Shown piece after piece: positions 12,125 to 61,050 of a stretch of 64,000 bases of DNA. The number at the start of each line of letters is the position of its first letter. The first letter of the stretch is position 1. A program made the position numbers and the translations under genes. This DNA is from Vitrella brassicaformis CCMP3155. Lineage: Eukaryota > Protista > Chromerida. The stretch spans positions 62,001 to 126,000 of the forward strand of contig CDMY01000198.1 in assembly GCA_001179505.1 (NCBI GenBank). The letters are read 5' to 3'. Below the pieces are notes generated by a model, which did no database searches, had not been told where the DNA came from, and saw nothing but the letters and a program-made list of their open reading frames with translations.

Positions 12125-12558
12125 TGGTGCGGCTGTGTGTTTTGACGTGTGATGTGATTGGCTGGGTGTGCGCTTCTTGTGTTTTTTGTCGTGTGTGGCT
12201 GGCTGCTGTCTTTTCCTTGCCTTACTCGGGGTGCGTGTGGAGGGGGAGGGGGAGGGGGGCTGCGTCCATGTACACCCTGTGGACGCAGCCCGACGTATGG
12301 TGATCGTATGTATGTATCCCTTTATACGTATGTACACACGTAGCTGGCATTGGTTGTGAGGGGCATGCGTGTCTGAAGCTGCCACAGTGGTGTATGTGCA
12401 CATGCCTCCTGACTCTTTTGCCTTGTGCGTACTCTCCATCTTGTCATGGTGCATGTCTGCAATGAATGCAATGAATCCCACCTGCATCTGGGGGTAGCTG
12501 GGGGCCCAATTGTGGGGGCCAATATCTGAGACGCTTCCGCAAGATCTGTGTGAAAAAC

Positions 12559-15500: not shown

Positions 15501-15628
15501 ACAAGGAGAGGACCTGGGCAGAGTTTTTCTTCGGGCGAGGGAAAGGGGACAATCGCAGTAAGGTGCACGCCAAGAGCGACAGGAGGAATGGCGGGCGGAG
15601 GAAAAGTGTTGCTGCTAGAGAGGGCTAG
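12559..15628 (+). CDS. Divergent protein-kinase-like protein (probable pseudokinase) with low-complexity C-terminal tail
   Basis: Subdomains in order: GLDGVCAVF (I), LAAFK (II), IRGLIQHL/HNVLAQDN (VI), MIDLA (VII), FAQSPE (VIII), EFVLSFAVG (IX), DDPTKRP (XI). The 3' exon structure beyond about 15150 is uncertain. Confidence 0.7.
15041..15084 (+). repeat. 15-bp coding tandem repeat x3 (ATGTCCCGCCGCAAC; (Y/H)VPPQ)
   Basis: Read directly from the sequence. Confidence 0.9.
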
Positions 15629-15719
15629 TGAGGGCATGGGAGAGAGTGTTGCGTGCACTGCGTCACGCGCTGCACGCGTGGTGGTGGTGTTCTGCTTAGG
15701 AGTTCTGCTTAGAATTCGT

Positions 15720-16132
15720 GTGGACGTGGTGTAGTGATCATGTGTGGTGTGTATGCATGTGACGATTGTCAGCTTTCAGACATCCGTGTCAATATAGACA
15801 CACACATGAAGTCAAATGCGGACAAAACACATGCAAAACAAACGAGACACAGACCACGTAGCGCCACACCAACACAGACAGACACACACCAACTAGGCAT
15901 ACAAATGCACATTCATTGGAATCGCTGCCTGCCACCCATAAACGGCTTTCAGAAAGAGTCTCAACTCGTACGCTATATTTGAATCTCCTCGCCTTTTCCT
16001 ATCCATCCCTGCCCTCCGTGCGTCCATGCATTTTCTGCACAACCATCATCGAAGCCGCCGCCACAATCAGCAGGGCACCACACAGACTCCATTGGTCGAG
16101 TGCACGACCCAGCACACACACCTGCACACGCA
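15720..16132. repeat. 413-bp direct repeat, copy 1 (duplicate of the EamA gene's last exon and 3' UTR)
   Basis: Matches 18966-19378 with one mismatch seen (atatttgaat vs atatttaaat). Confidence 0.95.
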
Positions 16133-16403
16133 CAGAGAAGGTGGAAACGTTTGGAGTGTCCGGGTCACTGAATCGGCAATGCGCCATGCCTTTGCACAAT
16201 GCAAATTGCAATGAATCATCCCCTTGTCATCGTCGACGATCGCAAGATGAGCCGGAAATGAAAAGATCCGGTGGAGGCAGCGAAGATTGAAAACCTTCGT
16301 GGGAGACGGCGAGACATTTAAAGAGAGACAGGCAGATGAAAAAGTACAGGATGATCAGACACTTTTTCACGCTGAGCCTCCAGCACACTGTGTGCTCCTC
16401 AGG

Positions 16404-17879
16404 ATGTTCTTGAGAGCTGCCTCGACAGTGAAAATGTGCGGTAAGATCGCCAACTGGAGAGCGGCGATGTGAAAAATGCGGTTTGAAACCGTTGCGTGTC
16501 AGGGGGGTACCTGCAGCTCGTCGAGCGAGGAGTCGACGGTATGGTGGCCGTCTTTCGTGGCCGGTGGCGGCCGAAGGGAGAGGAGGAGAACGGCGATGCA
16601 CGGCTGGCGGCCTTCAAGATCCTCAAGATACTGCCGCCTGATGCGCTAGAAGGCGACCCCGTCCTCAAGAGCCGCTACGAGAAGAGCCTGCTGGGGCTGA
16701 GGCGAGAGGACTCCATGATGACGGAGCATGGCGGGAAGGGGCCCTTCCTGAGGCGTTTTGAGGCTGAACTGGATGCAGAGGCACCTGCCTTCTTGGAGGA
16801 GGGAGACGCAGAGAAGGCGTGCATCTTTGTGGCGTTCCCCTGGCTGTCTGGTATGCCAACAATAAGACACTTACTTGGCATGCAAACCGCCTGTCTGTCC
16901 ATTGGTAACGATTCCTTTTGGTGCAGAAAACTACAGCAACGCGTCTACCTTCTTTGCCGAGCACAGCATCCCCCGCATCATCAAGGAGACTTGGATCCCA
17001 CTGGACCCAATGCTCGCCGAGGCTGGGCTGAGGGACCTTACCTACAGCATCCGCATGGCCATCAGGGGCCTGCTCCACCATTTGCGAGTGCACAAGACAG
17101 CCTTCCACGACTTCAACAGCCTCGCTCAGGACAATCTCGTCAAGGATATCTTTACCGACGAGCAGATCGCCAATCCAACTGCCGGCCCCCTCCCTCCCCC
17201 TTCCTTACCCTTCAGCGCAATGGCCGGCGGTCGGATGATCGACCTGGCCATGGACATTGTGCTGAGGGGCGAGACACAGCGGTCATTTACCGTCAGGGGG
17301 GATCCTGCTTTGTCCGCAGCGAAGGAGGAGATGCCAAAAGAAGACTTCTCAAGACTGCTGCGTAAGAGGAGCCTCGAGCGAGCCGTCAGGTGGCAAAAGG
17401 CCCTTTGCAGCCTCTACGACATAGACACCAGCCTGCCTGTGGTGCGCAAGGACTTCGAGTACATCAGCACCCTTGAAGGACACAAGCTGATGGGCTGGGT
17501 CTTGGAGTAGGTGAAGAAGCTGAGTGGGTTGGCGCTGCAGTGTTTGAGAGAGGACCCGATGGAGCGGCCACCTTTGGCTGATATCGAGACGGTGCTGGTA
17601 GAGATGCAGCGCCACCTCTCCAGCAGTTCGCACTGGGACTTCATCGAAGAGATCGCACAAGTATGCGGGGAGGTGTGGTCGATAATCGCACTATGCCAAT
17701 CTGTCTTTGGTGCGTGCAGAGTGTTGAGTTGTGTGAGGTGGAGCCACCTGAGGACGAGGTGAGACAGACGAGAGACGACAAAGTTGAGATACTCACAGCT
17801 GATCCCTTTGTCAGGTGGCTGGTGTCGCAACGGCTCAAGCCAACCCAACAGCTCATCCGCCGCGACACTTTGGTCCATT

Positions 17880-17916
<37 letters not shown>

Positions 17917-18423
17917 NNNNNNNNNNNNNNNNNNNNNNNNNNNNNNNNNNNNNNNNNNNNNNNNNNNNNNNNNNNNNNNNNNNNNNNNNNNNNNNNNNNN
18001 NNNNNNNNNNNNNNNNNNNNNNNNNNNNNNNNNNNNNNNNNNNNNNNNNNNNNNNNNNNNNNNNNNNNNNNNNNNNNNNNNNNNNNNNNNNNNNNNNNNN
18101 NNNNNNNNNNNNNNNNNNNNNNNNNNNNNNNNNNNNNNNNNNNNNNNNNNNNNNNNNNNNNNNNNNNNNNNNNNNNNNNNNNNNNNNNNNNNNNNNNNNN
18201 NNNNNNNNNNNNNNNNTTCCCCCCCCCCCCCCCCCCTCCAACGATTCCGGAGCCCCACATGCAGCCTCACGTTTCGTCCCCCTCAGCTGGAGGCCTCGAA
18301 GCACACAGAGGTGGCGATGAACTATCGCTGTGTACATTTTATATTTGTCTGGAGCGTTTCAACCCAAACTCATGTGCAGCACCCAACATCCATCTCGGCG
18401 TTCATCTGGTAATGGCCCGTTGA
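16404..18423 (+). pseudogene. Paralog of the 12559 pseudokinase, degraded (spans a gap)
   Basis: Collinear homology (VAVFRGRWRP, LAAFK, CIFVAFPWL, LAQDNLV, DIVLRGETQRSF) and same intron position (16851-16926). Has a 246-nt in-frame deletion and a premature TAG at 17508-17510 where the paralog has TGC. Confidence 0.8.
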
Positions 18424-18965
18424 CAAGAAGACATGCGCAGACTGTCGTGCATTCGATTTGTACGTTCAGGTGTAGGATCCCTGTGTGTCACCATTGTATC
18501 GACCCGGGGTGGTCGACCCTGAACAAGAAGGGAACCAAGCCGACGTGAGAAAACACGAAGGCTTTCGGCCAAGGTGGGCATCACACGAGCGCTGCGAAGA
18601 ATGATGATGAATGCGCTGCGTGCGTGCGTTTCTCGTTTGTTGGCTGCAGGGAGAAAGAGGTGTGTGCTGACACTCATCCATTGAGCTCGGTGTCTCTGTT
18701 TCGTGCAATGGCTTGCTCTTGTTTGTCCGCATGCCATGCTGGCTGTGTGCGGCTGGAAGGCAGAAGGGTGTTCGCAGCCGTCTGTTAGATAAGACGGCCA
18801 GCCAGAGGGCGCGCGAGGCGGAGATCACAGCTTATCAAGCGGAAACCCGCAGAAAATGCTCGTACCGGCACTGCCGGATCCACTGACCAAGGTGGGTGGG
18901 TTCAAGCGTGGGTTTGGTCTCTGTTGCCATCTCCGTGGCGAAATCCGTGTGTCGGCCACTGACTC

Positions 18966-19378
18966 GTGGACGTGGTGTAGTGATCATGTGTGGTGTGTAT
19001 GCATGTGACGATTGTCAGCTTTCAGACATCCGTGTCAATATAGACACACACATGAAGTCAAATGCGGACAAAACACATGCAAAACAAACGAGACACAGAC
19101 CACGTAGCGCCACACCAACACAGACAGACACACACCAACTAGGCATACAAATGCACATTCATTGGAATCGCTGCCTGCCACCCATAAACGGCTTTCAGAA
19201 AGAGTCTCAACTCGTACGCTATATTTAAATCTCCTCGCCTTTTCCTATCCATCCCTGCCCTCCGTGCGTCCATGCATTTTCTGCACAACCATCATCGAAG
19301 CCGCCGCCACAATCAGCAGGGCACCACACAGACTCCATTGGTCGAGTGCACGACCCAGCACACACACCTGCACACGCA
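18966..19378. repeat. 413-bp direct repeat, copy 2 (native EamA 3' end)
   Basis: Matches 15720-16132. Confidence 0.95.
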
Positions 19379-42978: not shown

Positions 42979-44190
42979 GTGGATCTGACACACATTGAGG
43001 TGGTAGAGGTAATGCAAAAGACTAGAGTTGTGGAGGTGGTGAGCCATAACACCGTCTTACATGGCTTCTCTGTCTGTCTGTCTGTCTGTCTGACTATCTG
43101 CAGAAATGGGAGACGAAAGTGGCCGAGAGGGACGTGGAGGTCAGTGACCGGGCAAGCTGTGCAGACCCATGCAGGCAGCCCTCACACTATCTGTGTCTCA
43201 CTGCTTGCTGTCTGCTGTCTGATGTCTGCAGCGGGCCTTACATGATTTGTATGGCCTGCGTGTGGAGGGGAAATTGGGCTACGGGGGCCAGGCGGAGCTG
43301 TGGCGGCTGTCGAGGGGCAAGGTGGTCAAGGTGCTCGACAAAAACTACTCCGTCGGCGGCGTAAGCACGACTTAGACCACAGCGACAAGGACCACAAGAG
43401 ACCATCATCCTTGCCTGTGTGTGTTGGTGTCTTGCGCAGCCCAACCACAAGCCGACATTTCAGCTTCACCACGAGAAGGGGCTGGCCAAATGCCCCCAGC
43501 TGGTGCGGCTGCACGGCGCCTTCACCGTCACGAGGTGCCACCGCACCTGTGTGTTGATGGAGTTCGTCGACGGTGGGCGAATGAGTAACACACACAAAGC
43601 ACGGGATGCTGCAGAGCTTGTGGATGTGTGTGTGTGTGCAGGGCAGCCGGTGTGGGAGCTGTGCGGCGGTGTGGGGGGAGGGAGACGCGAAGACCATCAC
43701 CCGAGATCTCCCCCTCCGCCGGCTGGCCCACCTCGACGTCAAGCCCGACAACCTTATCCGGCGAGGGGACGGGTCGAGTGTGCTGATAGATCTCGACTTC
43801 ATGGCTAGATATGAGGTGAGACATGGACATAAAAAGGGAGCAACCGATGGCAATGGCTGGGTGGATGGCTGCGTGTGTGTTGTCTGTGGTTGACATGCAG
43901 ACGGGCGATGGGAGACGGAAAGACATGAGGGATACAGGTAGGTGTGCCTGCCTGTTCTCGGCCGATGTATCGGGACTGTCATCTCTCTCTCACTCTGTGT
44001 GCGTGTGTGTGTCTGTCTGTGATGCTGCAGTCAGCACGCTGTTGATGTTGCTTGGGGTGGACAGCGAAACAGTCAACACGGTCCTTGCAGCCGACACGGT
44101 CCGGGAGAGAACCTATCAGTTGATCTTGACACACATAACTCTGACGCCTCTGCTTTGCCCCTCATTGGAATGCAGCCAACGGAAGAGGAC
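42979..44190 (+). pseudogene. Small-kinase family member K-A (frameshifted)
   Basis: GKLGYGGQAELWRL, VVKVL, VLMEFVDG, HLDVKPDN, VLIDLD. Extra G in the run at 43673-43678 and a deletion in the LKALAYLH helix relative to K-C. Broken off at 44190. Confidence 0.8.
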
Positions 44191-46160
44191 ATCGTTGTCT
44201 ACGTTTTATATTTGACGGAGGTGTTTCCAACGGCGCTGCGAAGCCTCCCGAAGAGAGATGACCCGATGGGGTGGCAGGGGATTCTCAGCCCGCTCCAGGT
44301 GTATGCACTGAGTACTCCCGACACAAGTTCTACGGCCATCTCAAGCTCAGTCTGCTTCGCCTGGGCTCTTCGGGCGCGTACAAGAACTGAGCGACTTATA
44401 CAGGGCCGAGAACATTTGGTGAGCGGCGGACAAGCTGGAGCCTGCGTCTGTGCACTGCGGCGTGTTTCTTGTCGTCCGCACACAACGATGATCGCCTCTG
44501 AAGTACTCACGGCTATTCGGTTCAGAGCGCAGAGATGCTTGAAGAGATTCCTCAACAACAGGGTAAGTGAGAAAAGTGGATGGATGGATGGGAAACGATG
44601 CGTCGGTTTCGCATTGCCTTCCCTGCGTCCGCAAGAATACGCTGTTCCACGCGATGTGGTCTCTGAGGGCGATTTGGTGTACGGCGGACGGGCGCTCCAC
44701 TCCCGACACAAGTTCTACGCCCATCTCAAGCTGAGCGTGCTTCGCCTGGGCTCTTCGGGCGCCTACAAGAACATGGCGGCCCTCTGCCGCAAGCTGACCG
44801 ACTTGTGCAAGGACGAGAACATCACTGTGAGCGTGTTGTCCTGGGTGAGCCAAACGTGACACCAGTAAGCTGAGCTCTTCTTTCTGCATGCGTCGTGTGC
44901 TGTGACCCTGCCCTCCTCATTCAGGACGATGGAGCCGAGAGTCTGCCGGTAGCGAAGGTATGTATCCCCCGCACACGTCTGAAGAGCCATACCTATCCAC
45001 CACACCACAGGTTCTCTCCGCCTGCTTGTTGCCTGCAGGGGACGGCTCCACACTCACCTCCTCAGCCCAAGTGGCTGCGTCGAGTGAGCCACGTGCACCC
45101 ATCCATCCATCCATCCATCCATCCACCACACTCTTTTCTGTCCCCTCTATCTTGCTTGCAGTTCTGGTGCGCGTCAAACCCTGCAGTCGTAACGATCCTG
45201 CGTTTGTTGGGGGAAGACCTGCAAAAGGAACCAGTACAAGAGGACCAATGAAATGATCGTCACAGACAGGCATTCTCTCCCACTCTGTCTGTGTCTGTGA
45301 TGCTGCAGTGACGACAATGTTGAAATTACTTGGTGTTGACACGGGGGCGGGTAACACGATCCTCACGGCCGCCACGGTATGAGAGACAACGTTATCAGTT
45401 GATCTCCAAATACATGACTCCCTCTCTGCTTTGCCTCTCATTCCAATGCAGCCGACAGAGGAGGCCATTCGTCAGGCCCTGTATCCATTCGCCCCCTCCA
45501 CCGAAGTGGTCGACTTCATCGCCAAACTTCTCAAGGGCATGAGCGCTCAGGAGGTCAGTTAGCCAGGGAAAAACAAGGACACTTCTCCCATGTCAGATTC
45601 GTGGACGTCTTGTGTGCTGTGTGTCGCCTGTCTCTCCCCCGCTCCTTCGGTCGTGCAGGCCCTCCACCACCCGTGGCTTGCTAATTCCCCACCACAGCCA
45701 CCAGCTGCTGCCGCTACTGTTGATGTCTATGCACCTCCTGCTGCCACCGGTGAGTGGGGGAGAGACACAACTGACATCCATTGCAATCAGAGCGCCTCAT
45801 CTCTGACATTGTATTGGATTGTTCGTCTCTTGACAGAACGACCGTATGTGCCGCCTGTGTATCGGCTGCCGCCACCACCGCCCCGACGAGTCCCTGCCGG
45901 TGAGTGGACAAGAGACACAATTTATTCAGTTCATTGCCATTGATTCTCTCCTGACGCACCTGCCCAAGCACTACTTCCATTCAGCATTGGAGGGCCCTTT
46001 TGCTGCTATGCTGTGTCCCTGCCAGCCAGCAATGCGCCACGAGGAGAGGCGGTGCGGAAGGCACCTATCGTTGTCTACATTTTATATTTCCAAGGCACTT
46101 TTCATTCGTCAAAACTGTGCATCGTTGGACTGTCAACGTCATGGAGCTGCTCAAGGGTAC
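44191..46160 (+). pseudogene. Scrambled relics: duplicated unknown exon fragments plus kinase C-lobe and N-lobe fragments
   Basis: HKFYxHLKLSxLRLGSSGAYKN occurs twice (about 44315-44390 and 44700-44770). 45290-45690 resembles 44010-44190 and ends ALHHPWL. 45950-46155 encodes HLPKHYF and VMELLKG, like K-B. Confidence 0.6.
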
Positions 46161-48498: not shown

Positions 48499-51201
48499 TC
48501 ATTGGACATGCCATGTGGTCCGTGACACGAGAGTGGGATGAGAGCATTGTTTCCATGCGACGAGTAGTCTTTCCACACGAACAGTGTTAACAAGCCGTCC
48601 ACACACCGTCAGCAACTCCGACGTACCCAGCGACTTGGACTGCCGCAGAGTGGCCGAGTGGAGGGAAAGGCCAGGCCGGTCGGAAATGGGTGTGGGAGTC
48701 TTTGGCCGGGTCATGTTTTCGATCTCATTGACGAGGCAGCGTGTCTGCTCGAGGACGGTCGTGGTGGGCATGATGTCCACAGGCAGGGGAGGGGGGCAGG
48801 GGAGGCGGGAGGGTGACTGCCAGTGGGATCGGCGCCTGGGACGCCTGTGACTCCACCTGCTGTGCCTGTGTCTCTTCCGGCGGCTGTTGCTCTTTGAGAC
48901 TCTCTGCTGTCGGCTGGTCTCTAATCGCCAGCACAGCGGCACCACCAGCTGTAGCGGCAGCGTCCTTGCCTTTGCTCCTCACACCAACGCCACTCTTGGC
49001 CTTGCCCAGCACCCCCAGGCCCTTGTGCTCCCTCTCCCTCTTGGCGTCAACACGCTTCAGCCCCTTCCTCACACCCACACCGCCCCAGCCACTCCCCTTC
49101 ACATAGCTGTCCGTCAGCAACGGGTCCGGCGGCCAATACGTTCACATTCACGTCCATCTCTCCACTCTGCTGCCCGTGCCGATGCTTCTTCGGCTGCACA
49201 GCCGCCATGACTTTCCCCCTCTTCCCCCCCCTCCCTCCCCTGACCCCGTCAGCCTGCCTGTGTCCGCAGCGGTCCGTCGCGCCTTCCCTTCTCGTCTCGG
49301 AAGCGGGACTGACGAGGGACCGACACGGCTCAGACAGGCCTCAGCGGGCCAGGATGGGCGGTGGGTGGTAAGGCGGTGGGGGCTGCAGCATGACGGGCAG
49401 CATCCTGGGCACCATAAGGGGGGCGGGTGGCAGCAGTGGTGGTGGCATCAGTGGTCGGTGTGGCGGTGGGGGCAGCACAAAATGTGCTCCTGTCAAGAGA
49501 CGAAAGCCCATGACACCGTCAGAGATCAGCCCGCGTCATTGCGATGGATCTTGGTTGTGTCTCTGCTTCACTCACCGGCAGCGGTTGGATGAGGCGCATG
49601 CATGCCAGCAGCGGCAGCAGGGGCAGCTAGGAAGGGTGCCGATGGGGCCAGCCAGGGGAGTTTGAGAGCCTGCATGACCGACCGACACACAACATGTGAT
49701 TGACATTGTGCCGCTTTTCGCCTGTGTGCTGACTGGCTGACCTCCTCTGCTGATGCGCCCTCGAAGATTGCAACCAAAAGGCTGACGAGGTCCCTCGATG
49801 GCGGCTCGGGCAGCTCCCTCGATAGAGCAGCGCGGAGGCCGGTCTCGGTGTCCTGCATTTCGAAAAAAAGGGCAAGTAAAGTGAATGTCTCTCAGACAAG
49901 TGTCTGGTTAATGCTCTCCTACATAATTGGCGACGATGTCCGCGGCCTTGTCGGCGTCGACGCCCATCAAACGCAGTATAGCGACCCATGGCAGACAGAC
50001 ACGTGAAGCGTCCACTGTGCGTGGTTTAGTGAGCAGACGTACCTGCCCACATCATGTCCTCGGCGGCCCCCTCGCCCGTCTGCACACACATCAATAGCAC
50101 CAAAGAGGGACAATGGTGAGCCAGGCAGCCATCCAGGCGGCTATCCATCAATCGATGTCGTCGGTGTGTCTCACCAGGTCCTCCTTCATAAGATCCAGGT
50201 CGATCAACACCGTAGAGCCGTCGGCCCGTCGCATGAGGTTTTCGGGTTTGACGTCGTGGTGGGCAAGGTGGCGGCGGTGGAGGTACGCGAGGGCTTTGAG
50301 TAGGTCTTTTGTGATCGTCCTCGCCTCGCCCTCCCCCACGCAGCCACCAAGCTCCCACACACCCTGACCTGCACACACACATGGACACATACATGGACAC
50401 ATACATGGACACACACAGAGAGAGAGAGATGGATAAACGAGTTGGTCAACAAGTCTTCTTGCCTTCCTCTTCAGTTACCCTCTATATATTCCACCAATAT
50501 ACACGTCCGACCGGCGCTCGCCACATCAAAACTCTCGAGGAGCCGCACGATGTTGGGGCAGCTGGCCAGGCCCTTCTCCGCGTAAAGGCGGTAGGTCGGC
50601 TGGAAGTGTCGCTGTTCAACACAGAGACACACAGATAGTGTCGTGTGTGTGCTGTGGTCTGCATGTTGCTTACCCCGCCTCTCGAGTAGTTCTCCTCGAG
50701 GACCTTGACCGCTTTTCCGCCCGACAATTTCCATATCTCGGCCTGGCCGCCCCTCGTCAGCTTCCCCTCCACCTCCAACCCATGAATATCATGTAACACC
50801 CCCTGCACACGTCAGCCAGCGGACAGCACACAATGAGGTATACATCTCAGTGAGCCACGGTGAGTCTGCTGACCTGGATGTCCCTCTCTGCCCTGGTCTC
50901 CCTCCAGTCCTGCAGCCACGCACACAACCGGAGACCCGGAGACGGCAGGTGAGACAGCGAGGTGGCTTGTGACAGCACTCACTGATGGCTGGCTCACCTC
51001 CTCGACTGTGCCGCTCTCCCGCATGATTTCCACCCTCTCCCTCGCCGCCGCCTCGCCCACTCTGGCTTTGGTGCCCTCGTAGGCGGCCGCCTCTTGAAGC
51101 CGCCTGTACTCGGCGGGCGGGTGGAGGGGCAGGGGCGGGTACTTGAGGCGGTGCAGGGGCACAGGTGAGTGCACACGTGTGTGCTGTGTCCTGGCGCTCA
51201 T
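48499..51201 (-). CDS. Small-kinase family member K-C (most intact copy; one splice acceptor looks mutated)
   Basis: GKLTRGGQAEIWKL, KAVKVL, ILVEYIEG, LKALAYLHRRHLAHHDVKPEN, VLIDLD, DMMWAG, QALKLPWL. The acceptor before VAILRLMG reads CAT instead of CAG (about 49988). The 3' end is uncertain. Confidence 0.7.
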
Positions 51202-51290: not shown

Positions 51291-51686
51291 ATGATGAGCG
51301 CCACGATGACACAGCACACACGTGTGCACCCACCTGTGCCCCTGCACCGCCTCAAGTACCCGCCCCTGCCCCTCCACCTGCCAGCCGAGTACAGGCGGCA
51401 ACAGGAGGCCGCCACCTACCAGGAGGACCTCGCGGCACTGGGCGAGGAGGCGGCGAGGGAGAGCGTGGAGATCCTTCGGGCGAGCGGCGTGATCGATAGG
51501 GTGAGCCAGCCATCAGTGAGTGCTGTCGCCAGCCACCTTGTCTCACCTGCCGTCTCCGGTTGTCTGCGTGGCTGCAGGACTGGAAGGGGATGAGGGTGCA
51601 GAGGGACATCCAGGTCGGCAGACTCACCGCAGCTCACTGAGATGTATATCTCATTGTGTGCTGTCCGCTGGCTGACGTGTGCAGGG
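51291..51686 (+). pseudogene. K-D: inverted 5' duplicate of K-C, frameshifted and truncated by the retroelement
   Basis: Exon 1 TQHTRVHPPVPLHRLKYPPLPLH... matches K-C. Exon 2 is 35 nt instead of 36 (TGA at 51591-51593). Homology stops 2 nt into exon 3. Confidence 0.85.
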
Positions 51687-51896
51687 TCTGATGCTCGTAA
51701 GGCCAATCTGTTGTATGGTCATCTGCTGCGTGTGATTGATTTTACAATGCACGAATGCCAGGAGTCTCTTGTGTTTGGTCTGTCTCGGTGTGTCGATGAG
51801 TTGACTCGATTTGGTTTTTCACGACCATTCATCCATCGCCAACTGACTCGTGTTGCCCGTTACTTCCCCTCACTGCTGCGTGCCCTGCGTGAGTGA
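51687..51896 (+). mobile_element. Putative pseudo-LTR: 3' end of an element ORF (post-RT helical region)
   Basis: SDARKANLLYGHLLRVIDFTMHECQESLVFGLSRCVDELTRFGFSRPFIHRQL...* begins abruptly inside K-D exon 3. It resembles the G.L.R...........l...l...GY....l C-terminus of PLE-type RT proteins (recalled). Confidence 0.5.
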
Positions 51897-52234
51897 AGCA
51901 CACTATGATCTGCCTGCCCGTTGTTGTTGTATCACCGCATCCCGCGAGACGAACACCGCTGCGGTTTTTGCTGCCCCGAACTCTTTACATGCGAATGGCC
52001 AGTAGGCGTGCGCGCTTCATGTAAGTGGCAGTGACTTGATACATCAATCGACGTGTGAGCGGTTAGAAGCACGTCCACACACAGATCTACGTCTGTAAGG
52101 AGGAGATCCAGCCATTGGTGTTCCTTCTGAAACGTCCCTCGCTCCGTCTCCGTCTTCTCACAGCTAATCTCCTGCCCCCTTGCTGAATCCCCTCCGTGAC
52201 CCACGCGCGCACTAGCGCACCTTGCGCGTATCCG

Positions 52235-53548
52235 ATGTCGTCCCACCGTAACACTGATTCCTTGGCAGATCTCAGGAGATCTACCAATCTCGGCAGCACG
52301 GCTACTCGCTTTGGATTCCCGCCCTTCGGCAGCACCAACCGCGACCCACCCACCCCTCCCACCGTCCCGGGATGCGGGACGTGTCAGCATATCCGATTCA
52401 TCAACAACCCGCTCAACCCCTTCCGCGTCGGATACAAGAAGGACGGCCGTTTCATAGGATGCGTCGCCATGACACCCGGCATCGAGAGTGCTATCACCAG
52501 CGGCACCAAGCAATTCAAGCTCGTCGACAACGACTACGTCCCGCTCGTTGACGAACTCACCAAGCCAGGCATGCTCATCGGCCTCCAACACCATGAGGCC
52601 GGCGTTCGCGGTCTCAGCAGCGACATACTCCTCCTCAGCGCCATCATGGTCAAGAAACTCTGCAACAAGCACGGCTACGACACCCCCCTCTCCCGTGGCG
52701 CCGGCGACGCTGCTGCCGCCGATCGGTACATCCACAACCCGATGAATCGAGCGGATGTCCGCAATCCACTCGCCAACGACCTGACAGCCGCCACCCACTG
52801 CCTCGCGAAGATCAGCGACTTCATATGCGACCACGACGGCAACACGCCGATTGAGCTCATGAACGCCCTCCCTCGCCTTCTTCAGGATTTCGCCACTCAG
52901 CCCGGCCCTTCTTCGAGTCGCCGCCGCAAGACATCATCCAACGCAGCTGCCGCGGCCGCCTCTCCGGCAGACGACGAAGACTCAATCCATGCTGAGCAAG
53001 ACGACTTCTTCAACGCCAACGACATGGAGCAAGACAACAAGGACGACGACTTCGACATGTACGACGATGACGCTGCCATTGCCCGTCGAGACGTCATTCC
53101 CATGGTCCGATTCAAGACACTCATCGGCCTCCAAACTCACCTCTCGGACATCCCCGACGACATCCAGCAGTTCATGGGCGCTGTCGTCACACCCACGGCC
53201 GCCATCGTCCAACTTGGTGGCCTGCTCAACAGCGACGACTGCGTGATCGACGCCCCCAACGTCATCGACGACTTCACCCTGCAGCAAGCCGCATTCTTCG
53301 CCAACCACATCGCCTCCATGCTTCCCCCGGCCAAGGCATCCCGCGCCAAGACCGCTCAGGAGCTCCTCAGTTGGGGCAAGCGCATCGACGCCAACGTCCA
53401 CCTGTCGGTCAAGCAAGTCATCAACTATGTCGCCATCAAATACGCCATCAGCCTACGCGCCAAAGGTCCCAGCAATGCGTCACAGGGATCGTCACAGGGA
53501 TCGTCAGTCAACACCCGCGGTCGTGCATCCACAAAAAAGACTGACTGA
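52235..53548 (+). CDS. Intronless 437-aa ORF of unknown function, inside the putative retroelement (ORF1)
   Basis: Long open frame with C-ending codon bias and no introns, unlike all host genes nearby. It ends about 50 bp before ORF2. Confidence 0.7.
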   Translation: MSSHRNTDSLADLRRSTNLGSTATRFGFPPFGSTNRDPPTPPTVPGCGTCQHIRFINNPLNPFRVGYKKDGRFIGCVAMTPGIESAITSGTKQFKLVDNDYVPLVDELTKPGMLIGLQHHEAGVRGLSSDILLLSAIMVKKLCNKHGYDTPLSRGAGDAAAADRYIHNPMNRADVRNPLANDLTAATHCLAKISDFICDHDGNTPIELMNALPRLLQDFATQPGPSSSRRRKTSSNAAAAAASPADDEDSIHAEQDDFFNANDMEQDNKDDDFDMYDDDAAIARRDVIPMVRFKTLIGLQTHLSDIPDDIQQFMGAVVTPTAAIVQLGGLLNSDDCVIDAPNVIDDFTLQQAAFFANHIASMLPPAKASRAKTAQELLSWGKRIDANVHLSVKQVINYVAIKYAISLRAKGPSNASQGSSQGSSVNTRGRASTKKTD

Positions 53549-53599
53549 TGTAAGGCGCCACTGGAGCTTCGCCCCCAGTGGCAACACCGAAATCGACCG

Positions 53600-55576
53600 G
53601 TGCTTCCTGCCAATCCGTTTTCCTCGTCTGTTATGTCTGTCCCTTATAGATCAGACTCTGTACGGTCAGTGGTTGGATCTCCAGACGCGTCATCGCCCTC
53701 CTTTTCCAGCTGCGCGTGCTGTACTACTGGGCAACACTCACTCACTCACGTACCCGAACAAGGCGCTGCAATTCATCCATCTGAGCATGCTATCTCGTTG
53801 CTTTTGACTGCGTGTAAGAATGAATCTGTGAAGCTCTCGAGTACTCGTCAGGTGTTTCGTTTTCTTCGCTTTTTGTCACGGGTGCGCCATCTACTCCACC
53901 ACCTTCGTACACACACCCGCTGTTCCCACTGTAGATGCACGTGGCGTATGTGCCGTTGTGAGTGGCTTTTCATTTTGCAACCCACACACCGTGAGCCGTT
54001 TCGCGCCGTCCGTCTGGATGGTCTACGTGATTTTGCCTCACCATGTGTCCAACATCGCCTGACACCCTCGTCAATTAAGACTCTCTGTACGCGTCTCTTT
54101 TCTATCCAGTCTCGCGCGATGTGTGCCCTTGTGTCACGTACCCCTACCCCTTTCCTGCGTAAGATCCATGCATTGAGAGAGCGACTGGGTGCTCTTTTTG
54201 CGCCTGGTGTACACGACATGAAGCATGGCCTCTATCTGCTGTGTTCCCCTTGGTCCACTCAGTCTTATCTCGGTTTCACGACACGTGGTTATGTTGTGCG
54301 TTGGGATGAGCATGTCAGTCACGCTTTTCGTCATGGCACTCGCTCCCACTCCCCACAGCAGCACTTATACGGCTCTCTGTCGCGAAATGATGTATGTGCG
54401 TATGCATGCGTCCCTCTGTGTTCATTTGACGCGTTGGGTCTCACTATACATCAAATGAAGTCGATTGAAGTACAGGCCATTGACGCTTTTCAACCCTCAC
54501 TCAACACACATTCGTCCTCTCGTCATGATTTGCATGCACTGCATCGCCNNNNNNNNNNNNNNNNNNNNNNNNNNNNNNNNNNNNNNNNNNNNNNNNNNNN
54601 NNNNNNNNNNNNNNNNNNNNNNNNNNNNNNNNNNNNNNNNNNNNNNNNNNNNNNNNNNNNNNNNNNNNNNNNNNNNNNNNNNNNNNNNNNNNNNNNNNNN
54701 NNNNNNNNNNNNNNNNNNNNNNNNNNNNNNNNNNNNNNNNNNNNNNNNNNNNNNNNNNNNNNNNNNNNNNNNNNNNNNNNNNNNNNNNNNNNNNNNNNNN
54801 NNNNNNNNNNNNNNNNNNNNNNNNNNNNNNNNNNNNNNNNNNNNNNNNACTCACCTGCTTTGCCTTTTCGTGCCTTTTCCCCCATCCATCCATCTGCTGA
54901 CTCGCTCCCGTCTGCATTGATCAACCCATCTGTGCCCCCACCCACCCTTTGTGCCACTGCTGCGCTGCTTGCTCGTCGTCCGTCACCCAGCCAGGCCACC
55001 CTTGCTGCGATTCGTGGATTGTCTGACACTGACAAGTGCCGTCTGTATGTATGCGGTCTGCGTGTGTTGTCCGGTGTGCATTGGGAATGGTTCGAATCTG
55101 CCTTTCGTCGTGCTATTCGTGTTCGGGACCAATTTCGACTATGGCGGCCACGGCTACTTGTCCGTTTGCATGTTCCTCTTATGTTGAATGATGTGTCGTG
55201 TTTCCGCCAGGCCGCGATTCATACCATACGTCACCTCCTGTCCGGTGTTGCGTCATCGTCACTGTTCCATGTGCAGGCAGCGTTCATTCCATCTGCGTGT
55301 CCATCCCTGACCACCTTGTACTATAATGCTAAGCGAATGGCGTCACAGACCCTCTCACAAGTGGTCTGTCCATGCCACCTGCCTCATTTTACGCAATGGC
55401 CACGCATCGATGGGCATGTCTGTGTGCGCCTGAGTGATCCATTCATGCGCGATGTCTTGCGCGTCCGCCTTTATGCCATGTTTTGGGCAGTGCATGCTGC
55501 GTTCGGATGCCGCTGTATCAACCAATCACTATGGGCGTACACTGCGCGTACATCACAGTCGCGATTTGCAGTGTGA
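53600..55576 (+). CDS. ORF2: GIY-YIG endonuclease plus CxC linker (gap inside; RT missing)
   Basis: HGLYLLCSPWSTQSYLGFT...VRWDEH...SIEVQAIDAFQPSLN, then LYYNAKRMA...VVCPCHLPHFTQWPRIDGHVCVRLSD. Residues after 55460 derive from an unrelated repeat. First ATG at about 53633. Frame continuity across the placeholder gap is not guaranteed. Confidence 0.75.
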   Translation: MLPANPFSSSVMSVPYRSDSVRSVVGSPDASSPSFSSCACCTTGQHSLTHVPEQGAAIHPSEHAISLLLTACKNESVKLSSTRQVFRFLRFLSRVRHLLHHLRTHTRCSHCRCTWRMCRCEWLFILQPTHREPFRAVRLDGLRDFASPCVQHRLTPSSIKTLCTRLFSIQSRAMCALVSRTPTPFLRKIHALRERLGALFAPGVHDMKHGLYLLCSPWSTQSYLGFTTRGYVVRWDEHVSHAFRHGTRSHSPQQHLYGSLSRNDVCAYACVPLCSFDALGLTIHQMKSIEVQAIDAFQPSLNTHSSSRHDLHALHRXXXXXXXXXXXXXXXXXXXXXXXXXXXXXXXXXXXXXXXXXXXXXXXXXXXXXXXXXXXXXXXXXXXXXXXXXXXXXXXXXXXXXXXXXXXXXXXXXXXXXSPALPFRAFSPIHPSADSLPSALINPSVPPPTLCATAALLARRPSPSQATLAAIRGLSDTDKCRLYVCGLRVLSGVHWEWFESAFRRAIRVRDQFRLWRPRLLVRLHVPLMLNDVSCFRQAAIHTIRHLLSGVASSSLFHVQAAFIPSACPSLTTLYYNAKRMASQTLSQVVCPCHLPHFTQWPRIDGHVCVRLSDPFMRDVLRVRLYAMFWAVHAAFGCRCINQSLWAYTARTSQSRFAV

Positions 55577-55818
55577 CTGACAAATCTGTGCGGACTGTGC
55601 GGACCAGGCACCATCCAGACAAAAAGACGTTAACAAAGTGATGGATGGATGGATGGATGGACAGGCAGACAGACAGACGGGCCAGCCGATACAGACAGCC
55701 ACACACAGACGAGTATCAAGACTGGTGCACGTGATGGTGAGTGCGGCTGGCTGCCCAATGAATGGCGTGATCAATCAATGACAGACACTTCAGTCGTCGG
55801 TCGATTCATGTACAAGTG
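55461..55818. repeat. ~350-bp diverged direct repeat, copy 1
   Basis: Homologous to 60702-61050; the 65-bp core 55522-55586 is identical to 60752-60816. Confidence 0.9.
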
Positions 55819-56253
55819 GAGGCTCTTTTGGCATGTCCACTTTGTCCTTAGCGCCGTGAGTCGTGTATGCATGTATGATATGCATCCATAGGTAGGGAGT
55901 ATGTTGGATGGATATCGTCGCTTTGGTTGATGCATCGCATGCAGAGGTGCATTGCATGCGCGTGTTGTGCGCGCGGTGACGTGAAGTGACGTGATGTGGT
56001 GTGATGTGGTACACATACAGACAGACGGTCAGCTACAGACACACGTACAATACTACCCACCCTCACGCACTAACAGACCTCACATGCCATGACATCTGCC
56101 TGTCTCTATCTTCCTTCCTGTGCTTACCACGTGTGTTCGTTCGCTGACATGCCTGTGCACGTGCACGCGCTCTGTTTTTCGGTGGGGTGGCCCTCCTTGG
56201 CTGTGTGCCCACAGGGCTCACTCACTCACTGCATGTTAATTGAGTCCGATGCA

Positions 56254-58561: not shown

Positions 58562-60701
58562 GCCGGCCGTGATGTCCTTATTCACAATAGCAAGCAATGG
58601 AGGGAGGGGATGCGGGAATAGGGATAAGCGGGATGGCCTCAGTGCCGAGCAAAAGACCCTCAATGGGTCAAATCAGAAGCTCCAGGAGCCAGCTGGTCCT
58701 CACTGGGCGAATGCGTTGGATTGATGGAGTGCCGATTAATGCTGGCTGGCGCACGGCACTCGGGCACACACAAACCGTCGTCTGCACGATGGCGTTGTTG
58801 TGTGTACGTGTTGTTCGTCGTTTCGCGATTGCGAGCTTAAACGCTCAGGAACTGACAAACAACAAACAAACAGCAATTTTGAAACGAGTGAAGCGATCGG
58901 CTGTTTCACTTATCTTTCCTTCACGTGCTCGACTCATCTGAGTGTGCATTCATGTGCTGCTGCCTCTCCCCGCCCCTCCCTCCTTTGTGGCGCATGAGCA
59001 GTCACTCGAGAGCGTCGATGACACTCACTCACTTCAGTCAGTCACCCATCGCAGAGCGTAGGCAAAGCAGTGCAGGGCAGGCAGCAAGGCAGTGAGTGAG
59101 ATGGCCAGGCAAGCAGACACCGCACCCAAGCAGCCGAGCAGTCAGCCAGGAAAACGACGAGAAAAACCATTGCAAACGGACACGGGTCAGGCAGGGTGGG
59201 TCAGACACGATGGGTCATGCCGAGAGGAAGAGGAAACTCCGCCAGAGAGGTCTTCCATGCTTCATTCGCTTCGTCGAACTTGCCTCGAGTGGGTCCATCA
59301 TTGTTCTCTGCTTTCCTGGATGCAGGTGGCACGAGAACGCCGATGGCATCAGCATGAGGGCAGCCGCACCACAAGCCGACCAGCAAGAGTGCTGCGGCAT
59401 GATGCCGAGGGAAATGGCGAAGATCTTTGCTGCCGAGAGGAAAGGGTGCTGAGGAAGCAAGATCTGATGAGCAACATGCCTCTCAGGACCTTCAGGGCCT
59501 CTTCGCGGCTGCGCGTTGACAAAGTGATGGGGATGATCTTGCAGATGATCTTGGTCTTGGGGGTTCGGGGATGCATCCGTGTTTTCATGCCTATGTGTGT
59601 GCCATCAGGTGAGATACATCCATCGTCTGGGCGTTTGCTCGAGCGCGAGGCATGGGGGCTTATGCCGCGGCATTGGTTCATCGTTGTGCCCATCATCATG
59701 AGCTATCTTCCGTTGGCCGCATCCGGCAAGGAGGGTTTCATCGTGATGGAGGAAGGCGAAGCGACTGGACGGCATCCTCATTCGACCACCCGCGTCCTTG
59801 GCAAAGTGCCGCAGCGGCTTATTCGATGGCGTGAAAACGCGACCGTCATCTGGACGTGAAATCGCGAGGGATGAAGTCACGTCCACAATCAGGTACACGC
59901 ACAGACACTCAGGCTATACATTTGCGCGCATCTATGTTGTTGTTTCCTGTGGGTCATGCATTCACCTTCATCGTGTAGGGCGGTTTATCCACGACTGCGA
60001 TGAAGGTGCCAACCCCGCTGCAGCGGGGCGTGCTGAGAAGGCCACTTTGGACGAAACAAAACGTTTGAAACAACGTGTGTGCGATTGTGTGTAGGTGAAG
60101 CGTGATGTGCTGCTGAAGGGTCTCTTGTCTGTGGGAGCAAGGTGTGCCCACACATAGACTAACATGTGTGGGCACATGTGTGAATGTGTCGTATGGTGTG
60201 TGAATGTGTCTTTATGTGAAGGTATCGAGGTGAAACACGTGGGGGTCGCATGCGTACCAGGTGAGTATGTGGGCGTGGGATGCGTGTGTGTGCATGGTCA
60301 TCTGTGTGTGTAGGCGACAGTTTCTACGGCGTGCCGGTGGAGGGATGCGGGGATGCGTAAAAGGCGGAAAAGGCGGATCGATGTGTATGTCCAGCTATTG
60401 TATGTATGTGTGAGTGAGTGTGTCGTTAGGCCTTTCTAAGTTAACGGGGGGTGGCCTTGATAAGTAATCTCTCACGGTTTTGCTGGCGTGAACGGGGGAA
60501 GGGTCAGAAAGCAGGCCCATGGCCGTCTGCCTGCCTGCCGGTCTATGTGTCTGTGTGTCTGTGTGTCTGTCTGTGTGTCTGTCTGTCTGTCTGTCTGGCG
60601 ACAGACAACCAGCTAAACCGACCAGTGGTTCATTTCGCCGTCTGCATATCTGTGGAAGTGTGTCTTCCTTGTTGCTTTTCCCGCTTTGTTCACGTGAGTA
60701 T

Positions 60702-61050
60702 GCGTCCGCTTTTATGCCATGTACGTGCAGTGTACGCCATGTTTTGTATGTCCAATCACTATGGGCGTACACTGCGCGTACATCACAGTCGCGATTTGCA
60801 GTGTGACTGACAAATCACTTGACTGATCATCTCATGACGTGTCTGTGCAGAAAGACGTTTACAAAGTGATGGATGGATGGATGGGCAAGGCAGACAAGGA
60901 GGAAGACAGGCGGGCCAGCCGATACAGACAGCCACACACAGACGAGTATCAAGACTGGTGCACGTGATGGTGAGTGCGGCTGGCTGCCCAATGAGTGGTG
61001 TGATCAATCAATGCAGACACTTCAGTCGTCGGTCGGTTCATGTACAAGTG
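60702..61050. repeat. ~350-bp diverged direct repeat, copy 2
   Basis: Homologous to 55461-55818. Confidence 0.9.

What the first reader, a model, noticed from the sequence alone, without database searches (positions are those of the whole stretch)
51687..55460. Permuted Penelope-like retroelement (N-terminal GIY-YIG plus CxC linker) in an alveolate genome
Seen in the sequence: a GIY-YIG nuclease (GLY 54227, YLG 54266, R..EH, E, QPSLN 54491) followed downstream by N....CPCH.....PRIDGHVCVRLSD (55367-55430). Established: the Naiad/Chlamys clade of PLEs has the endonuclease N-terminal, joined to a C-terminal RT by a CxC domain. Chlamys lack the CCHH motif, as here (no CxxC between GLY and YLG), and form pseudo-LTRs by partial tandem insertion. 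To my knowledge Chlamys were described mainly from green algae, spike mosses and slime moulds, so a chromerid/alveolate lineage may be new; this needs a literature check. The RT is cut off at 55460 by another repeat.
Basis: partly seen in the sequence, partly recalled or inferred. Interest (0 to 1): 0.85.

Follow-up and report, generated by a model that had tools for sequence, protein, structure and literature searches.

The report
Chlamys-type Penelope-like retrotransposon in Vitrella
This is a broken copy of a Penelope-like retrotransposon with its nuclease in front of its reverse transcriptase, found in the chromerid alga Vitrella brassicaformis; it takes a known transposon type into alveolates, where I found no earlier report.

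Summary
Window 51687-~55468 (Vitrella brassicaformis scaffold CDMY01000198.1) is a 3'-truncated copy of a Penelope-like element (PLE) with an N-terminal GIY-YIG endonuclease, a CxC/GH linker motif and no CCHH motif.

- **Relatives:** Two full-length relatives from the same organism carry a C-terminal reverse transcriptase (RT). One is an intact 1136-aa ORF in a transcript; the other is a 4897-nt genomic unit. The RT's closest solved structures are telomerase RTs.
- **Named homologues:** These include Chara braunii GIY-YIG/RT proteins. Chara is a published Chlamys host.
- **Pseudo-LTR:** 51687-52089 is a head-to-tail, 5'-truncated partial copy of 403 nt. The other genomic copy has only 137 nt, with the same junction.
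- **Assembly gap:** The 300-N run is a placeholder for about 75 nt. It is in frame and encodes the arginine-rich block.
ORF1 (437 aa, no known domain) belongs to the element. A 100-nt GT-AG intron follows its stop codon. In unspliced DNA, ORF1 and the EN-RT ORF share one frame across a single TGA. A Cys cluster lies upstream of the nuclease.
- **Hammerhead ribozyme:** None was found.

Verdict: a new member of a known kind in a new host lineage. Its placement against named PLE clades by phylogeny is untested.

The parts
51687..52089 (+). Upstream 5'-truncated partial copy (pseudo-LTR). It holds the last 69 codons and stop of the RT ORF (51687-51896) and the 3' UTR (51897-52089), and joins head-to-tail to the main unit at 52089|52090.
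   Evidence: tblastn of P0001 residues 1064-1126. It is 85% identical to L002 14340-14744. The same junction (...CACAGATCTA|CGTCTGTAAGG...) is seen in L002, where the upstream repeat is only 137 nt.
52090..52234 (+). Start of the main unit and 5' UTR. RNA contigs begin at 52106.
   Evidence: Three RNA contigs of this copy (L007-L009) start at 52106. Three RNA contigs of the L002 copy start at the homologous base.
52235..53548 (+). ORF1, 437 aa (P0002), with no recognisable domain and an acidic stretch. Its stop codon TGA is at 53546-53548.
   Evidence: A 59% identical paralogue (P0003) sits directly upstream of the EN-RT ORF in L002. dN/dS is 0.36 over 426 codons. There is no Pfam or PDB match.
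53550..53649 (+). 100-nt GT-AG intron that starts one base after the ORF1 stop codon.
   Evidence: RNA contig L003 lacks exactly the homologous 100 nt of L002 (GTAAGG...polypyrimidine-TAG). Unspliced RNA contigs also exist (L005, L007, L008). The intron has the same length and position in both genomic copies.
53651..54548 (+). N-terminal part of the EN-RT ORF. It has a Cys cluster CxxCxCx4CxC (53921-53959) and a GIY-YIG endonuclease (54227-54505) with R, H, E and N residues and no CCHH motif.
   Evidence: It is 54% identical to P0001 180-341. The family profile gives E=2.9e-30. Pfam GIY-YIG hits 13 of 31 relatives. The AF2 model's best match is the I-TevI catalytic domain. dN/dS is 0.11.
54549..54848 (.). 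Assembly gap of 300 N, a placeholder for about 75 nt. The missing stretch encodes the arginine-rich block between EN and CxC.
   Evidence: Offsets against L002 give 306-81=225=3x75. L013 bridges the gap with 78 nt. All N runs in the window are 300 nt.
54849..55468 (+). Linker and CxC motif (CPC...P..DGHVC, 55367-55438). The copy is cut off here, before the RT.
   Evidence: It is 58% identical to P0001 379-573. The family profile gives E=8.9e-16. The CxC..GH block is conserved across the family. The three-way alignment defines the breakpoint.

Best explanation
Window 51687-~55468 is a dead, 3'-truncated copy of a two-ORF Penelope-like retrotransposon of the N-terminal-endonuclease (Naiad/Chlamys) type, Chlamys-like in structure, in Vitrella brassicaformis.

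Shown:
- The full unit is about 4.9 kb: 5' UTR, ORF1 (437-439 aa), a 100-nt intron, a roughly 1130-aa ORF (Cys cluster, GIY-YIG nuclease, Arg-rich block, CxC motif, telomerase-like RT with a long motif A-to-C spacing, thumb) and a roughly 200-nt 3' UTR.
- Copies are preceded head-to-tail by a 5'-truncated copy of variable length, the pseudo-LTR.
- RNA starts 17 nt inside the unit and is found both spliced and unspliced.
- Both ORFs evolved under purifying selection.

Inferred:
- The promoter lies in the pseudo-LTR.
- The GIY-YIG domain nicks the target and the RT copies the element RNA from that nick, as in target-primed reverse transcription shown in vitro for another PLE (PMC11167929). Template continuation onto a second RNA or tandem transcript would give the partial tandem.
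- The EN-RT protein has no conserved start codon of its own, so it is probably made by read-through of the in-frame TGA on unspliced RNA or by reinitiation.

This copy lacks the RT and cannot move on its own.
For: - **Full-length relatives:** P0001 (1136 aa, intact, in a transcript) and genomic L002 are colinear with all three window pieces.
- **Domain order:** The nuclease is N-terminal to the RT in every one of 36 homologues that match both domains.
- **GIY-YIG:** Supported by Pfam in relatives and by fold. The best matches are I-TevI, UvrC and Eco29kI, with probability 0.98 and TM-score on the target (TMt) up to 0.75.
- **CxC..P..GHV block:** Conserved family-wide.
- **RT:** The AF2 model has pLDDT 88.9. 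The top 14 PDB matches are all TERT, at 5e-10 to 1e-6, against group II RT 1e-6, LINE-1 3e-5 and R2 4e-4. TERT is also the best sequence-profile hit.
- **Motif A-to-C spacing:** 157 aa in P0001 and a family median of 150.
- **Pseudo-LTR:** 403 nt here against 137 nt in L002, with an identical junction.
- **Intron:** Retained in two diverged copies.
- **Hammerhead:** None, even at E<=1.
- **Named homologues:** Six Chara braunii proteins.
Against: - No tree with named Naiad, canonical PLE or TERT references could be built, so clade membership rests on architecture, motifs, fold and homology to Chara proteins.
- The window's own Pfam GIY-YIG hit is not significant (E=0.23).
- The nuclease profile finds nothing in PDB by sequence, and its Foldseek E-values are weak (0.29) although the probability is high.
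- In the unrooted RT tree the Vitrella pair is a long separate branch outside the starred clade that holds the Chara sequences.
- The upstream Cys cluster and ORF1 are not part of the minimal Chlamys plan.
- No intact genomic copy was seen. L002 has a frameshift and a 49-aa deletion.
- Target preference and the 'tail' could not be assessed.
Confidence: 0.87

Rival explanations
1. It is an N-terminal-EN PLE, but from a separate deep lineage that is sister to the described Naiad and Chlamys groups, not a Chlamys proper.
For: The Vitrella pair sits on a long branch (1.16) outside the 38-row starred clade (96) that contains all six Chara sequences. Identity to any non-Vitrella relative is only 24-29%. 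The upstream CxxCxCx4CxC cluster and a domain-less ORF1 are not in the published minimal Chlamys plan (PMC8557442). The host is an alveolate.
Against: Chlamys is defined structurally and was itself paraphyletic in the RT tree of PMC8557442. The defining features are all present: N-terminal EN, no CCHH, CxC, DK and a long A-B' insert. Two-ORF Chlamys are already described in Chara. The tree here has no outgroup.
Confidence: 0.2
2. It is a host gene or a domesticated RT-nuclease gene, not a mobile element.
For: ORF1 is annotated as an ordinary gene and is expressed as a roughly 1.5-kb RNA. Both ORFs show purifying selection.
Against: There are at least two diverged genomic copies at unrelated loci plus a third family in transcripts. 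The copies are truncated, frameshifted or deleted. They carry head-to-tail partial copies of different length at a precise junction. 132 homologue clusters share the same architecture, and one cluster has 20 members on many contigs.
Confidence: 0.03
3. It is an LTR or non-LTR retrotransposon that happens to carry a nuclease-like N-terminus, and the repeat at 51687-52089 is a true LTR.
For: A direct repeat flanks the L002 unit. The Pfam RVT_1 hit is generic.
Against: The repeat is 403 nt here and 137 nt in L002, and here it includes 69 codons of the RT ORF, which a true LTR would not. No protease, RNase H, integrase or AP-endonuclease domain was detected. Solved retroviral/LTR-type RTs are absent from the top 50 structural matches, and non-LTR RTs rank below every TERT.
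Confidence: 0.02

Closest known systems
Chlamys PLEs (Craig, Yushenova, Rodriguez, Arkhipova 2021, PMC8557442), especially the two-ORF Chlamys-2 type of Chara braunii
   Same: Both have an N-terminal GIY-YIG nuclease without CCHH and with R/H/E/N kept, a CxC (zf-CDGSH-like) motif before the RT, and a DK motif. Both also have a long motif A-B' insert (IFD position), pseudo-LTRs from partial tandems, no hammerhead, an upstream extra ORF in some families, and intron retention. There is direct sequence homology to six Chara braunii GIY-YIG/RT proteins.
   Different: The host is an alveolate (chromerid), not the green lineage or Physarum. ORF1 has no zinc knuckle or any known domain. The intron lies between the two ORFs rather than in the 5' UTR. 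The RNA 5' end is 17 nt inside the unit, not in the pseudo-LTR. A CxxCxCx4CxC cluster lies about 90 aa upstream of GIY. The RT branches separately from the Chara clade.
Naiad PLEs of invertebrates
   Same: Both have an N-terminal EN, a basic (KR-rich) block, a CxC motif, an RT with an IFD, pseudo-LTRs and no hammerhead.
   Different: Naiads keep the CCHH motif inside the GIY-YIG core and a CX2-5CxxC linker next to it, and they have DKA. Here there is no Cys pair in the core, and the Cys cluster has another pattern and position.
Canonical Penelope/Poseidon, Neptune and Nematis PLEs
   Same: They share a GIY-YIG nuclease, a TERT-related RT, pseudo-LTRs, intron retention and frequent truncation.
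   Different: In those elements the EN is C-terminal with CCHH, hammerhead ribozymes lie in the pseudo-LTRs, and there is no CxC and no IFD.
Telomerase reverse transcriptase (TERT)
   Same: TERTs are the closest solved structures to the RT half (the top 14 Foldseek matches). The motif A-to-C spacing of 157 aa matches TERTs (from memory: human D712 to D868, yeast Est2 D530 to D670). The profile alignment to yeast TERT runs through the A-B' region without large gaps.
   Different: This protein has no TEN or telomerase RNA-binding signature, carries a nuclease, and is encoded by a dispersed, multicopy and decaying element.

Membership tests
Penelope-like elements (general) | RT most closely related to telomerase RTs | tested here: met
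   The top 14 Foldseek PDB matches are all TERT, and TERT is the top profile hit. No phylogeny was done.
Penelope-like elements (general) | GIY-YIG endonuclease fused to the RT | tested here: met
   Pfam GIY-YIG hits 13 of 31 relatives, and two relatives pass the curated cut-off. The fold matches I-TevI, UvrC and Eco29kI. EN and RT lie in one ORF in P0001.
Penelope-like elements (general) | Pseudo-LTR formed by a head-to-tail, 5'-truncated partial copy of variable length | tested here: met
   The partial copy is 403 nt in the window (including RT codons) and 137 nt in L002, with an identical junction.
Penelope-like elements (general) | Introns retained through retrotransposition | tested here: met
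   The same 100-nt GT-AG intron is present in two copies that have diverged to dS 0.5-0.8. It is absent from RNA contig L003.
Penelope-like elements (general) | 30-40 bp 'tail' at one end of insertions | not tested
   Only one complete 3' end (L002) was available, with no empty site to compare.
Naiad/Chlamys (N-terminal EN+ PLEs) | EN N-terminal to the RT | tested here: met
   This holds in P0001, L002 and all 36 homologues that match both domains.
Naiad/Chlamys (N-terminal EN+ PLEs) | CxC (zf-CDGSH-like) motif between EN and RT | tested here: met
   The window has CPC...P..DGHVC at 55367-55438. The N...CxC...P...GHV block is conserved across the family.
Naiad/Chlamys (N-terminal EN+ PLEs) | Insertion at the IFD position between RT motifs A and B' | tested here: met
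   A-to-B' spacing is 112 aa in P0001 and the family median is 107. A-to-C spacing is 157 aa and the median is 150. The region aligns colinearly with yeast TERT. No canonical PLE was available as a short-spacing comparator.
Naiad/Chlamys (N-terminal EN+ PLEs) | No canonical hammerhead ribozyme | tested here: met
   Rfam finds nothing at gathering score or at E<=1 in the window element and L002; L001 was scanned at gathering score only.
Naiad/Chlamys (N-terminal EN+ PLEs) | RT/EN phylogeny groups it with curated Naiad and Chlamys sequences | not testable with these tools
   No named Naiad, canonical PLE or TERT sequences could be brought in. The only named relatives are Chara braunii proteins, and the tree is unrooted.
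Chlamys | CCHH motif absent from the GIY-YIG core | tested here: met
   There is one Cys between GIY and YIG in the window, L002 and P0001. The family consensus VYxxxSPxxxxxYIG has no conserved Cys pair.
Chlamys | CX2-5CxxC linker upstream of GIY-YIG absent | tested here: inconclusive
   No such motif lies next to GIY. However, a CxxCxCx4CxC cluster lies about 90 aa upstream (53921-53959). P0026 shares it, and five other relatives have looser versions.
Chlamys | DK motif without a fixed third residue | tested here: met
   P0001 and L002 have (L/V)DKSKG, and the D is invariant in the family. This region is missing from the truncated window copy.
Chlamys | Insertion bias for (CA)n or (C)n | tested here: inconclusive
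   In L002, a short (GT)5 run lies 15 nt beyond the 3' end. That is one site only, and the window copy has lost its 3' end.
Chlamys | Known hosts: green algae, spike mosses, Physarum | tested here: not met
   The host is Vitrella brassicaformis CCMP3155, an alveolate. This is the taxonomic novelty and is not a structural criterion.
Naiad | CCHH inside the GIY-YIG core, plus an adjacent CX2-5CxxC linker | tested here: not met
LTR retrotransposons | Equal-length LTRs with protease, RNase H and integrase | tested here: not met
   Repeat lengths differ (403 against 137 nt) and the repeat includes RT coding sequence. No such domains were found.

The most novel reading that the evidence does not exclude
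The element may use a retrovirus-like expression switch that has not been described for PLEs. On unspliced RNA, ORF1 and the EN-RT ORF are in one frame separated by a single UGA, so read-through would give a fusion protein. Splicing of the 100-nt intron that begins one base after the UGA puts the EN-RT ORF out of frame, which would give an ORF1-only message. The EN-RT ORF has no conserved start codon in this family. The ORF1-less sister family (P0001) starts at an ATG homologous to the TGATG at the ORF1 stop. On this reading the Vitrella elements would be a separate two-ORF alveolate PLE lineage.
Probability: 0.2. Interest if true: 0.6.

Novelty: new member of a known kind. Interest (0 to 1): 0.45.

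Why it matters
N-terminal-EN PLEs were described in 2021 from animals (Naiad) and from the green lineage plus a slime mould (Chlamys).

- **Host range:** A chromerid copy places this architecture in Alveolata, next to the apicomplexan parasites. That supports an ancient, pan-eukaryotic distribution of the permuted PLE clade.
- **Annotation:** The 2015 chromerid genome paper has no PLE class in its transposon table, so these copies were probably filed as genes or unclassified repeats. ORF1 is annotated as an ordinary gene.
- **Unnamed diversity:** The 132 mostly unnamed homologue clusters from metagenomes and transcriptomes suggest much more uncharacterised diversity.
- **Expression:** The arrangement of ORF1, stop codon, intron and EN-RT ORF gives a testable case for how PLEs express a second protein and why they keep introns.

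Tried and rejected
- **Word-indexed protein search with the 32-sequence family alignment:** It returned only P0001 and one Sparganum fragment, so it gave no named references.
- **Cluster look-ups for 20 top hits:** They gave no names. One NCBI-sourced member, on a short contig of a very large assembly (probably a metagenome), gave no organism either. The third look-up gave the Chara names.
- **PDB sequence searches:** P0001 as a single sequence, the N-terminal profile and ORF1 all found nothing.
- **Supplement of PMC8557442:** It is not held as text, so no curated Chlamys or Naiad sequences were available.
- **The gene downstream of the PLE in L001 (TPR-like):** It is unrelated to ORF1, and the 5' end of L001 is not a copy of its 3' UTR.
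- **Selenocysteine reading of the in-frame TGA:** It is not supported, because Rfam finds no SECIS or any other RNA family.
- **-1 frameshifting on spliced RNA:** It is unlikely, because the EN-RT frame is closed by a TGA two codons before the splice junction, from the sequence.
- **Other PLE pieces in the window:** None were found.


Full report
**Observation.** GLY is at 54227, YLG at 54266, RWDEH at 54299, the conserved E within 54464-54481, PSLN at 54494-54505, and CPCH...PRIDGHVCVRLSD at 55367-55438. Alone, the nuclease piece scores only E=0.23 against Pfam GIY-YIG. A profile built from 29 distant relatives, with all Vitrella sequences left out, scores the pre-gap piece at 2.9e-30 and the post-gap piece at 8.9e-16.

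**The assembly gap.**
- All six N runs in the window are exactly 300 nt, so the length is a placeholder.
- The flanks match residues 180-341 and 379-573 of one uninterrupted relative, P0001.
- The flanks also match positions 12317 and 12398 of genomic locus L002. The offsets differ by 225 = 3 x 75 nt.
- A transcript contig from the same organism (L013) matches both flanks almost exactly: 135 of 136 nt before the gap, and two differences in about 460 nt after it. It bridges the gap with 78 nt.
- About 75 nt are therefore missing and the frame is kept. The hidden stretch encodes the arginine-rich block that lies between nuclease and CxC in relatives.
- L013 carries one extra CCAT in a short (CCAT)n run compared with the window.

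**Source.** ORF1 of the window is an exact match to a gene on scaffold CDMY01000198.1 of Vitrella brassicaformis CCMP3155 (GCA_001179505.1).

**Full-length relatives.**
- P0001 (1136 aa, an intact ORF on a 5-kb transcript contig, L001) is 53-58% identical to the window's two EN-side ORF pieces (49% over the RT C-terminal fragment) and continues into an RT.
- Locus L002, on another Vitrella scaffold, holds a 4897-nt unit with ORF1, an intron and the whole EN-CxC-RT ORF. It is damaged by one frameshift and a 49-aa in-frame deletion.
- The window copy stops at about 55466-55472, at residue ~573 of P0001 and before the RT. There an unrelated repeat begins, which recurs at about 60700-61050.

**Domains.**
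- *Nuclease.* Of 31 relatives, 13 hit Pfam GIY-YIG (best 3.4e-7), and two pass the curated cut-off. The AF2 model of the N-terminal half has a confident beta-beta-alpha-alpha-beta-alpha core. Its best PDB matches are the I-TevI catalytic domain (probability 0.98, TMt 0.67-0.75), then UvrC and R.Eco29kI GIY-YIG domains. The R, H, E and N residues are nearly invariant. No Cys pair lies between GIY and YIG, so CCHH is absent.
- *Linker.* The block N...CxC...P...(D)GHV..RL is conserved across the family.
- *RT.* The AF2 model has pLDDT 88.9. Its top 14 PDB matches are all telomerase RTs (5e-10 to 1e-6). They are followed by a group II intron RT (1e-6), LINE-1 ORF2p (3e-5) and R2 (4e-4). TERT is also the best profile hit by sequence, though group II maturase is close behind.
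- *Spacing.* Motif A-to-C spacing is 157 aa in P0001 and the family median is 150. That is TERT-like, so an insert sits at the IFD position.
- *Hammerhead.* No hammerhead or other Rfam family is present, even at E<=1.

**Family.** An exhaustive HMMER search with P0001 found 132 clusters at E<=1e-3. In every one of 36 proteins that match both domains, the nuclease comes first. Most hits are unnamed metagenome or transcriptome proteins. Six, however, are Chara braunii proteins annotated as CCHC, GIY-YIG or RT domain proteins. Chara braunii is a named Chlamys host, including a type with an upstream zinc-knuckle ORF (PMC8557442). In an unrooted RT tree the Chara sequences lie within one starred 18-row clade (support 100) that also holds 12 unnamed sequences. 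The two Vitrella sequences form a long separate branch outside a starred 38-row clade that includes them.

**Anatomy of the insertion.**
- *Partial upstream copy.* Window 51687-52089 is the last 69 codons of the RT ORF plus the 3' UTR of a second copy. It joins head-to-tail to the unit at 52089|52090.
- *Variable length.* L002 has the identical junction but only 137 nt of upstream copy. That is the variable-length pseudo-LTR of PLEs, not a true LTR.
- *RNA start.* Six RNA contigs from several runs start 17 nt inside the unit, at 52106 here.
- *ORF1.* It spans 52235-53548 and belongs to the element. It precedes the EN-RT ORF in both genomic copies and has dN/dS 0.36, against 0.09-0.13 for the EN, linker and RT parts. 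It has no relatives elsewhere and no recognised domain.
- *Intron.* A 100-nt GT-AG intron (53550-53649) begins one base after the ORF1 stop. One RNA contig lacks it and others retain it.
- *Intron retention.* Keeping the intron in two copies that have diverged to dS 0.5-0.8 fits the known habit of PLEs to retain introns (PMC8557442).

**Mechanism.**
- *Shown:* the architecture, the transcription, the splicing and the purifying selection.
- *Inferred from the family:* the GIY-YIG domain nicks the target and the RT primes on the nick. Internal initiation and template continuation would give tails and partial tandems (PMC11167929; PMC8557442). The pseudo-LTR probably supplies the promoter.
- *Translation of the EN-RT ORF.* It has no conserved start codon. 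On unspliced RNA it is in frame with ORF1 across one TGA in both copies. After splicing it is out of frame and closed two codons upstream of the junction. Read-through or reinitiation is therefore likely but untested.
- *ORF1-less family.* This family (P0001) starts at an ATG homologous to the TGATG at the ORF1 stop.

**Novelty.** Craig et al. 2021 list green algae, Chara, Selaginella and Physarum as Chlamys hosts and never mention alveolates. The chromerid genome paper's transposon table has no PLE class. Full-text searches found no report of such elements in alveolates. This is a new member of a known kind in a new host lineage, with some variant features: ORF1, the intron position and the upstream Cys cluster.

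**Limits.** No named Naiad, canonical PLE or TERT sequences were available, so clade placement is untested. Copy number, target preference and tails could not be assessed. I did not build, search or fold a joined ORF1-EN-RT model; the pieces were handled separately by reference.

Noticed in passing
window 50801-51190 and 51308-51686: This is a near-complete inverted duplication (85-92% complementary, 117-nt spacer) of host sequence. The left arm is the 5' part of an annotated protein-kinase gene on the minus strand. The outer end of the right arm abuts the first base of the truncated PLE copy (51686|51687), and the palindrome does not extend into the element. It may be a fold-back repair product made when the element inserted.
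   Followed up: partly
window 53542-53650 (and L002 11314-11422): ORF1 and the EN-RT ORF are in the same frame, separated by one TGA, in both diverged copies. The 100-nt intron starts one base after the stop (TGAT|GTAAG). This stretch is much less diverged (dS 0.22) than the flanking coding sequence (0.54-0.77). How the EN-RT protein is translated is unexplained.
   Followed up: partly
window 55470-55820 and 60700-61050: This roughly 350-nt repeat (94-100% identical in parts, with GATG and CAGA microsatellites) replaces the rest of the PLE copy. It is absent from L002 and its nature is unknown.
   Followed up: partly
L013 (JGI 3300017148 contig Ga0186167_102679): The first ~675 nt of this transcript contig match the window copy almost exactly (135/136 nt before the gap; two differences in ~460 nt after it). 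The rest matches the L002 copy at 99.2%. It is either a chimeric assembly or a third, recombinant copy.
   Followed up: partly
L001 3972-4781: The intact P0001 element is on one polyadenylated transcript contig together with a downstream TPR-like gene. That suggests read-through or an insertion just upstream of a host gene.
   Followed up: partly
window 12637-19265: Several direct repeats are spaced 3.2-3.9 kb apart: 70-76% identical blocks and one 300-nt block at 100% (15720-16019 = 18966-19265). They lie around an N gap at 17917-18216. This is either a tandem gene duplication or an assembly artefact.
   Followed up: no
window 44008-45390: Internal direct repeats are present here: 105 nt at 72% identity with 1278-nt spacing, and 74 nt at 93% identity with 385-nt spacing. 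The gene is probably repeat-containing.
   Followed up: no
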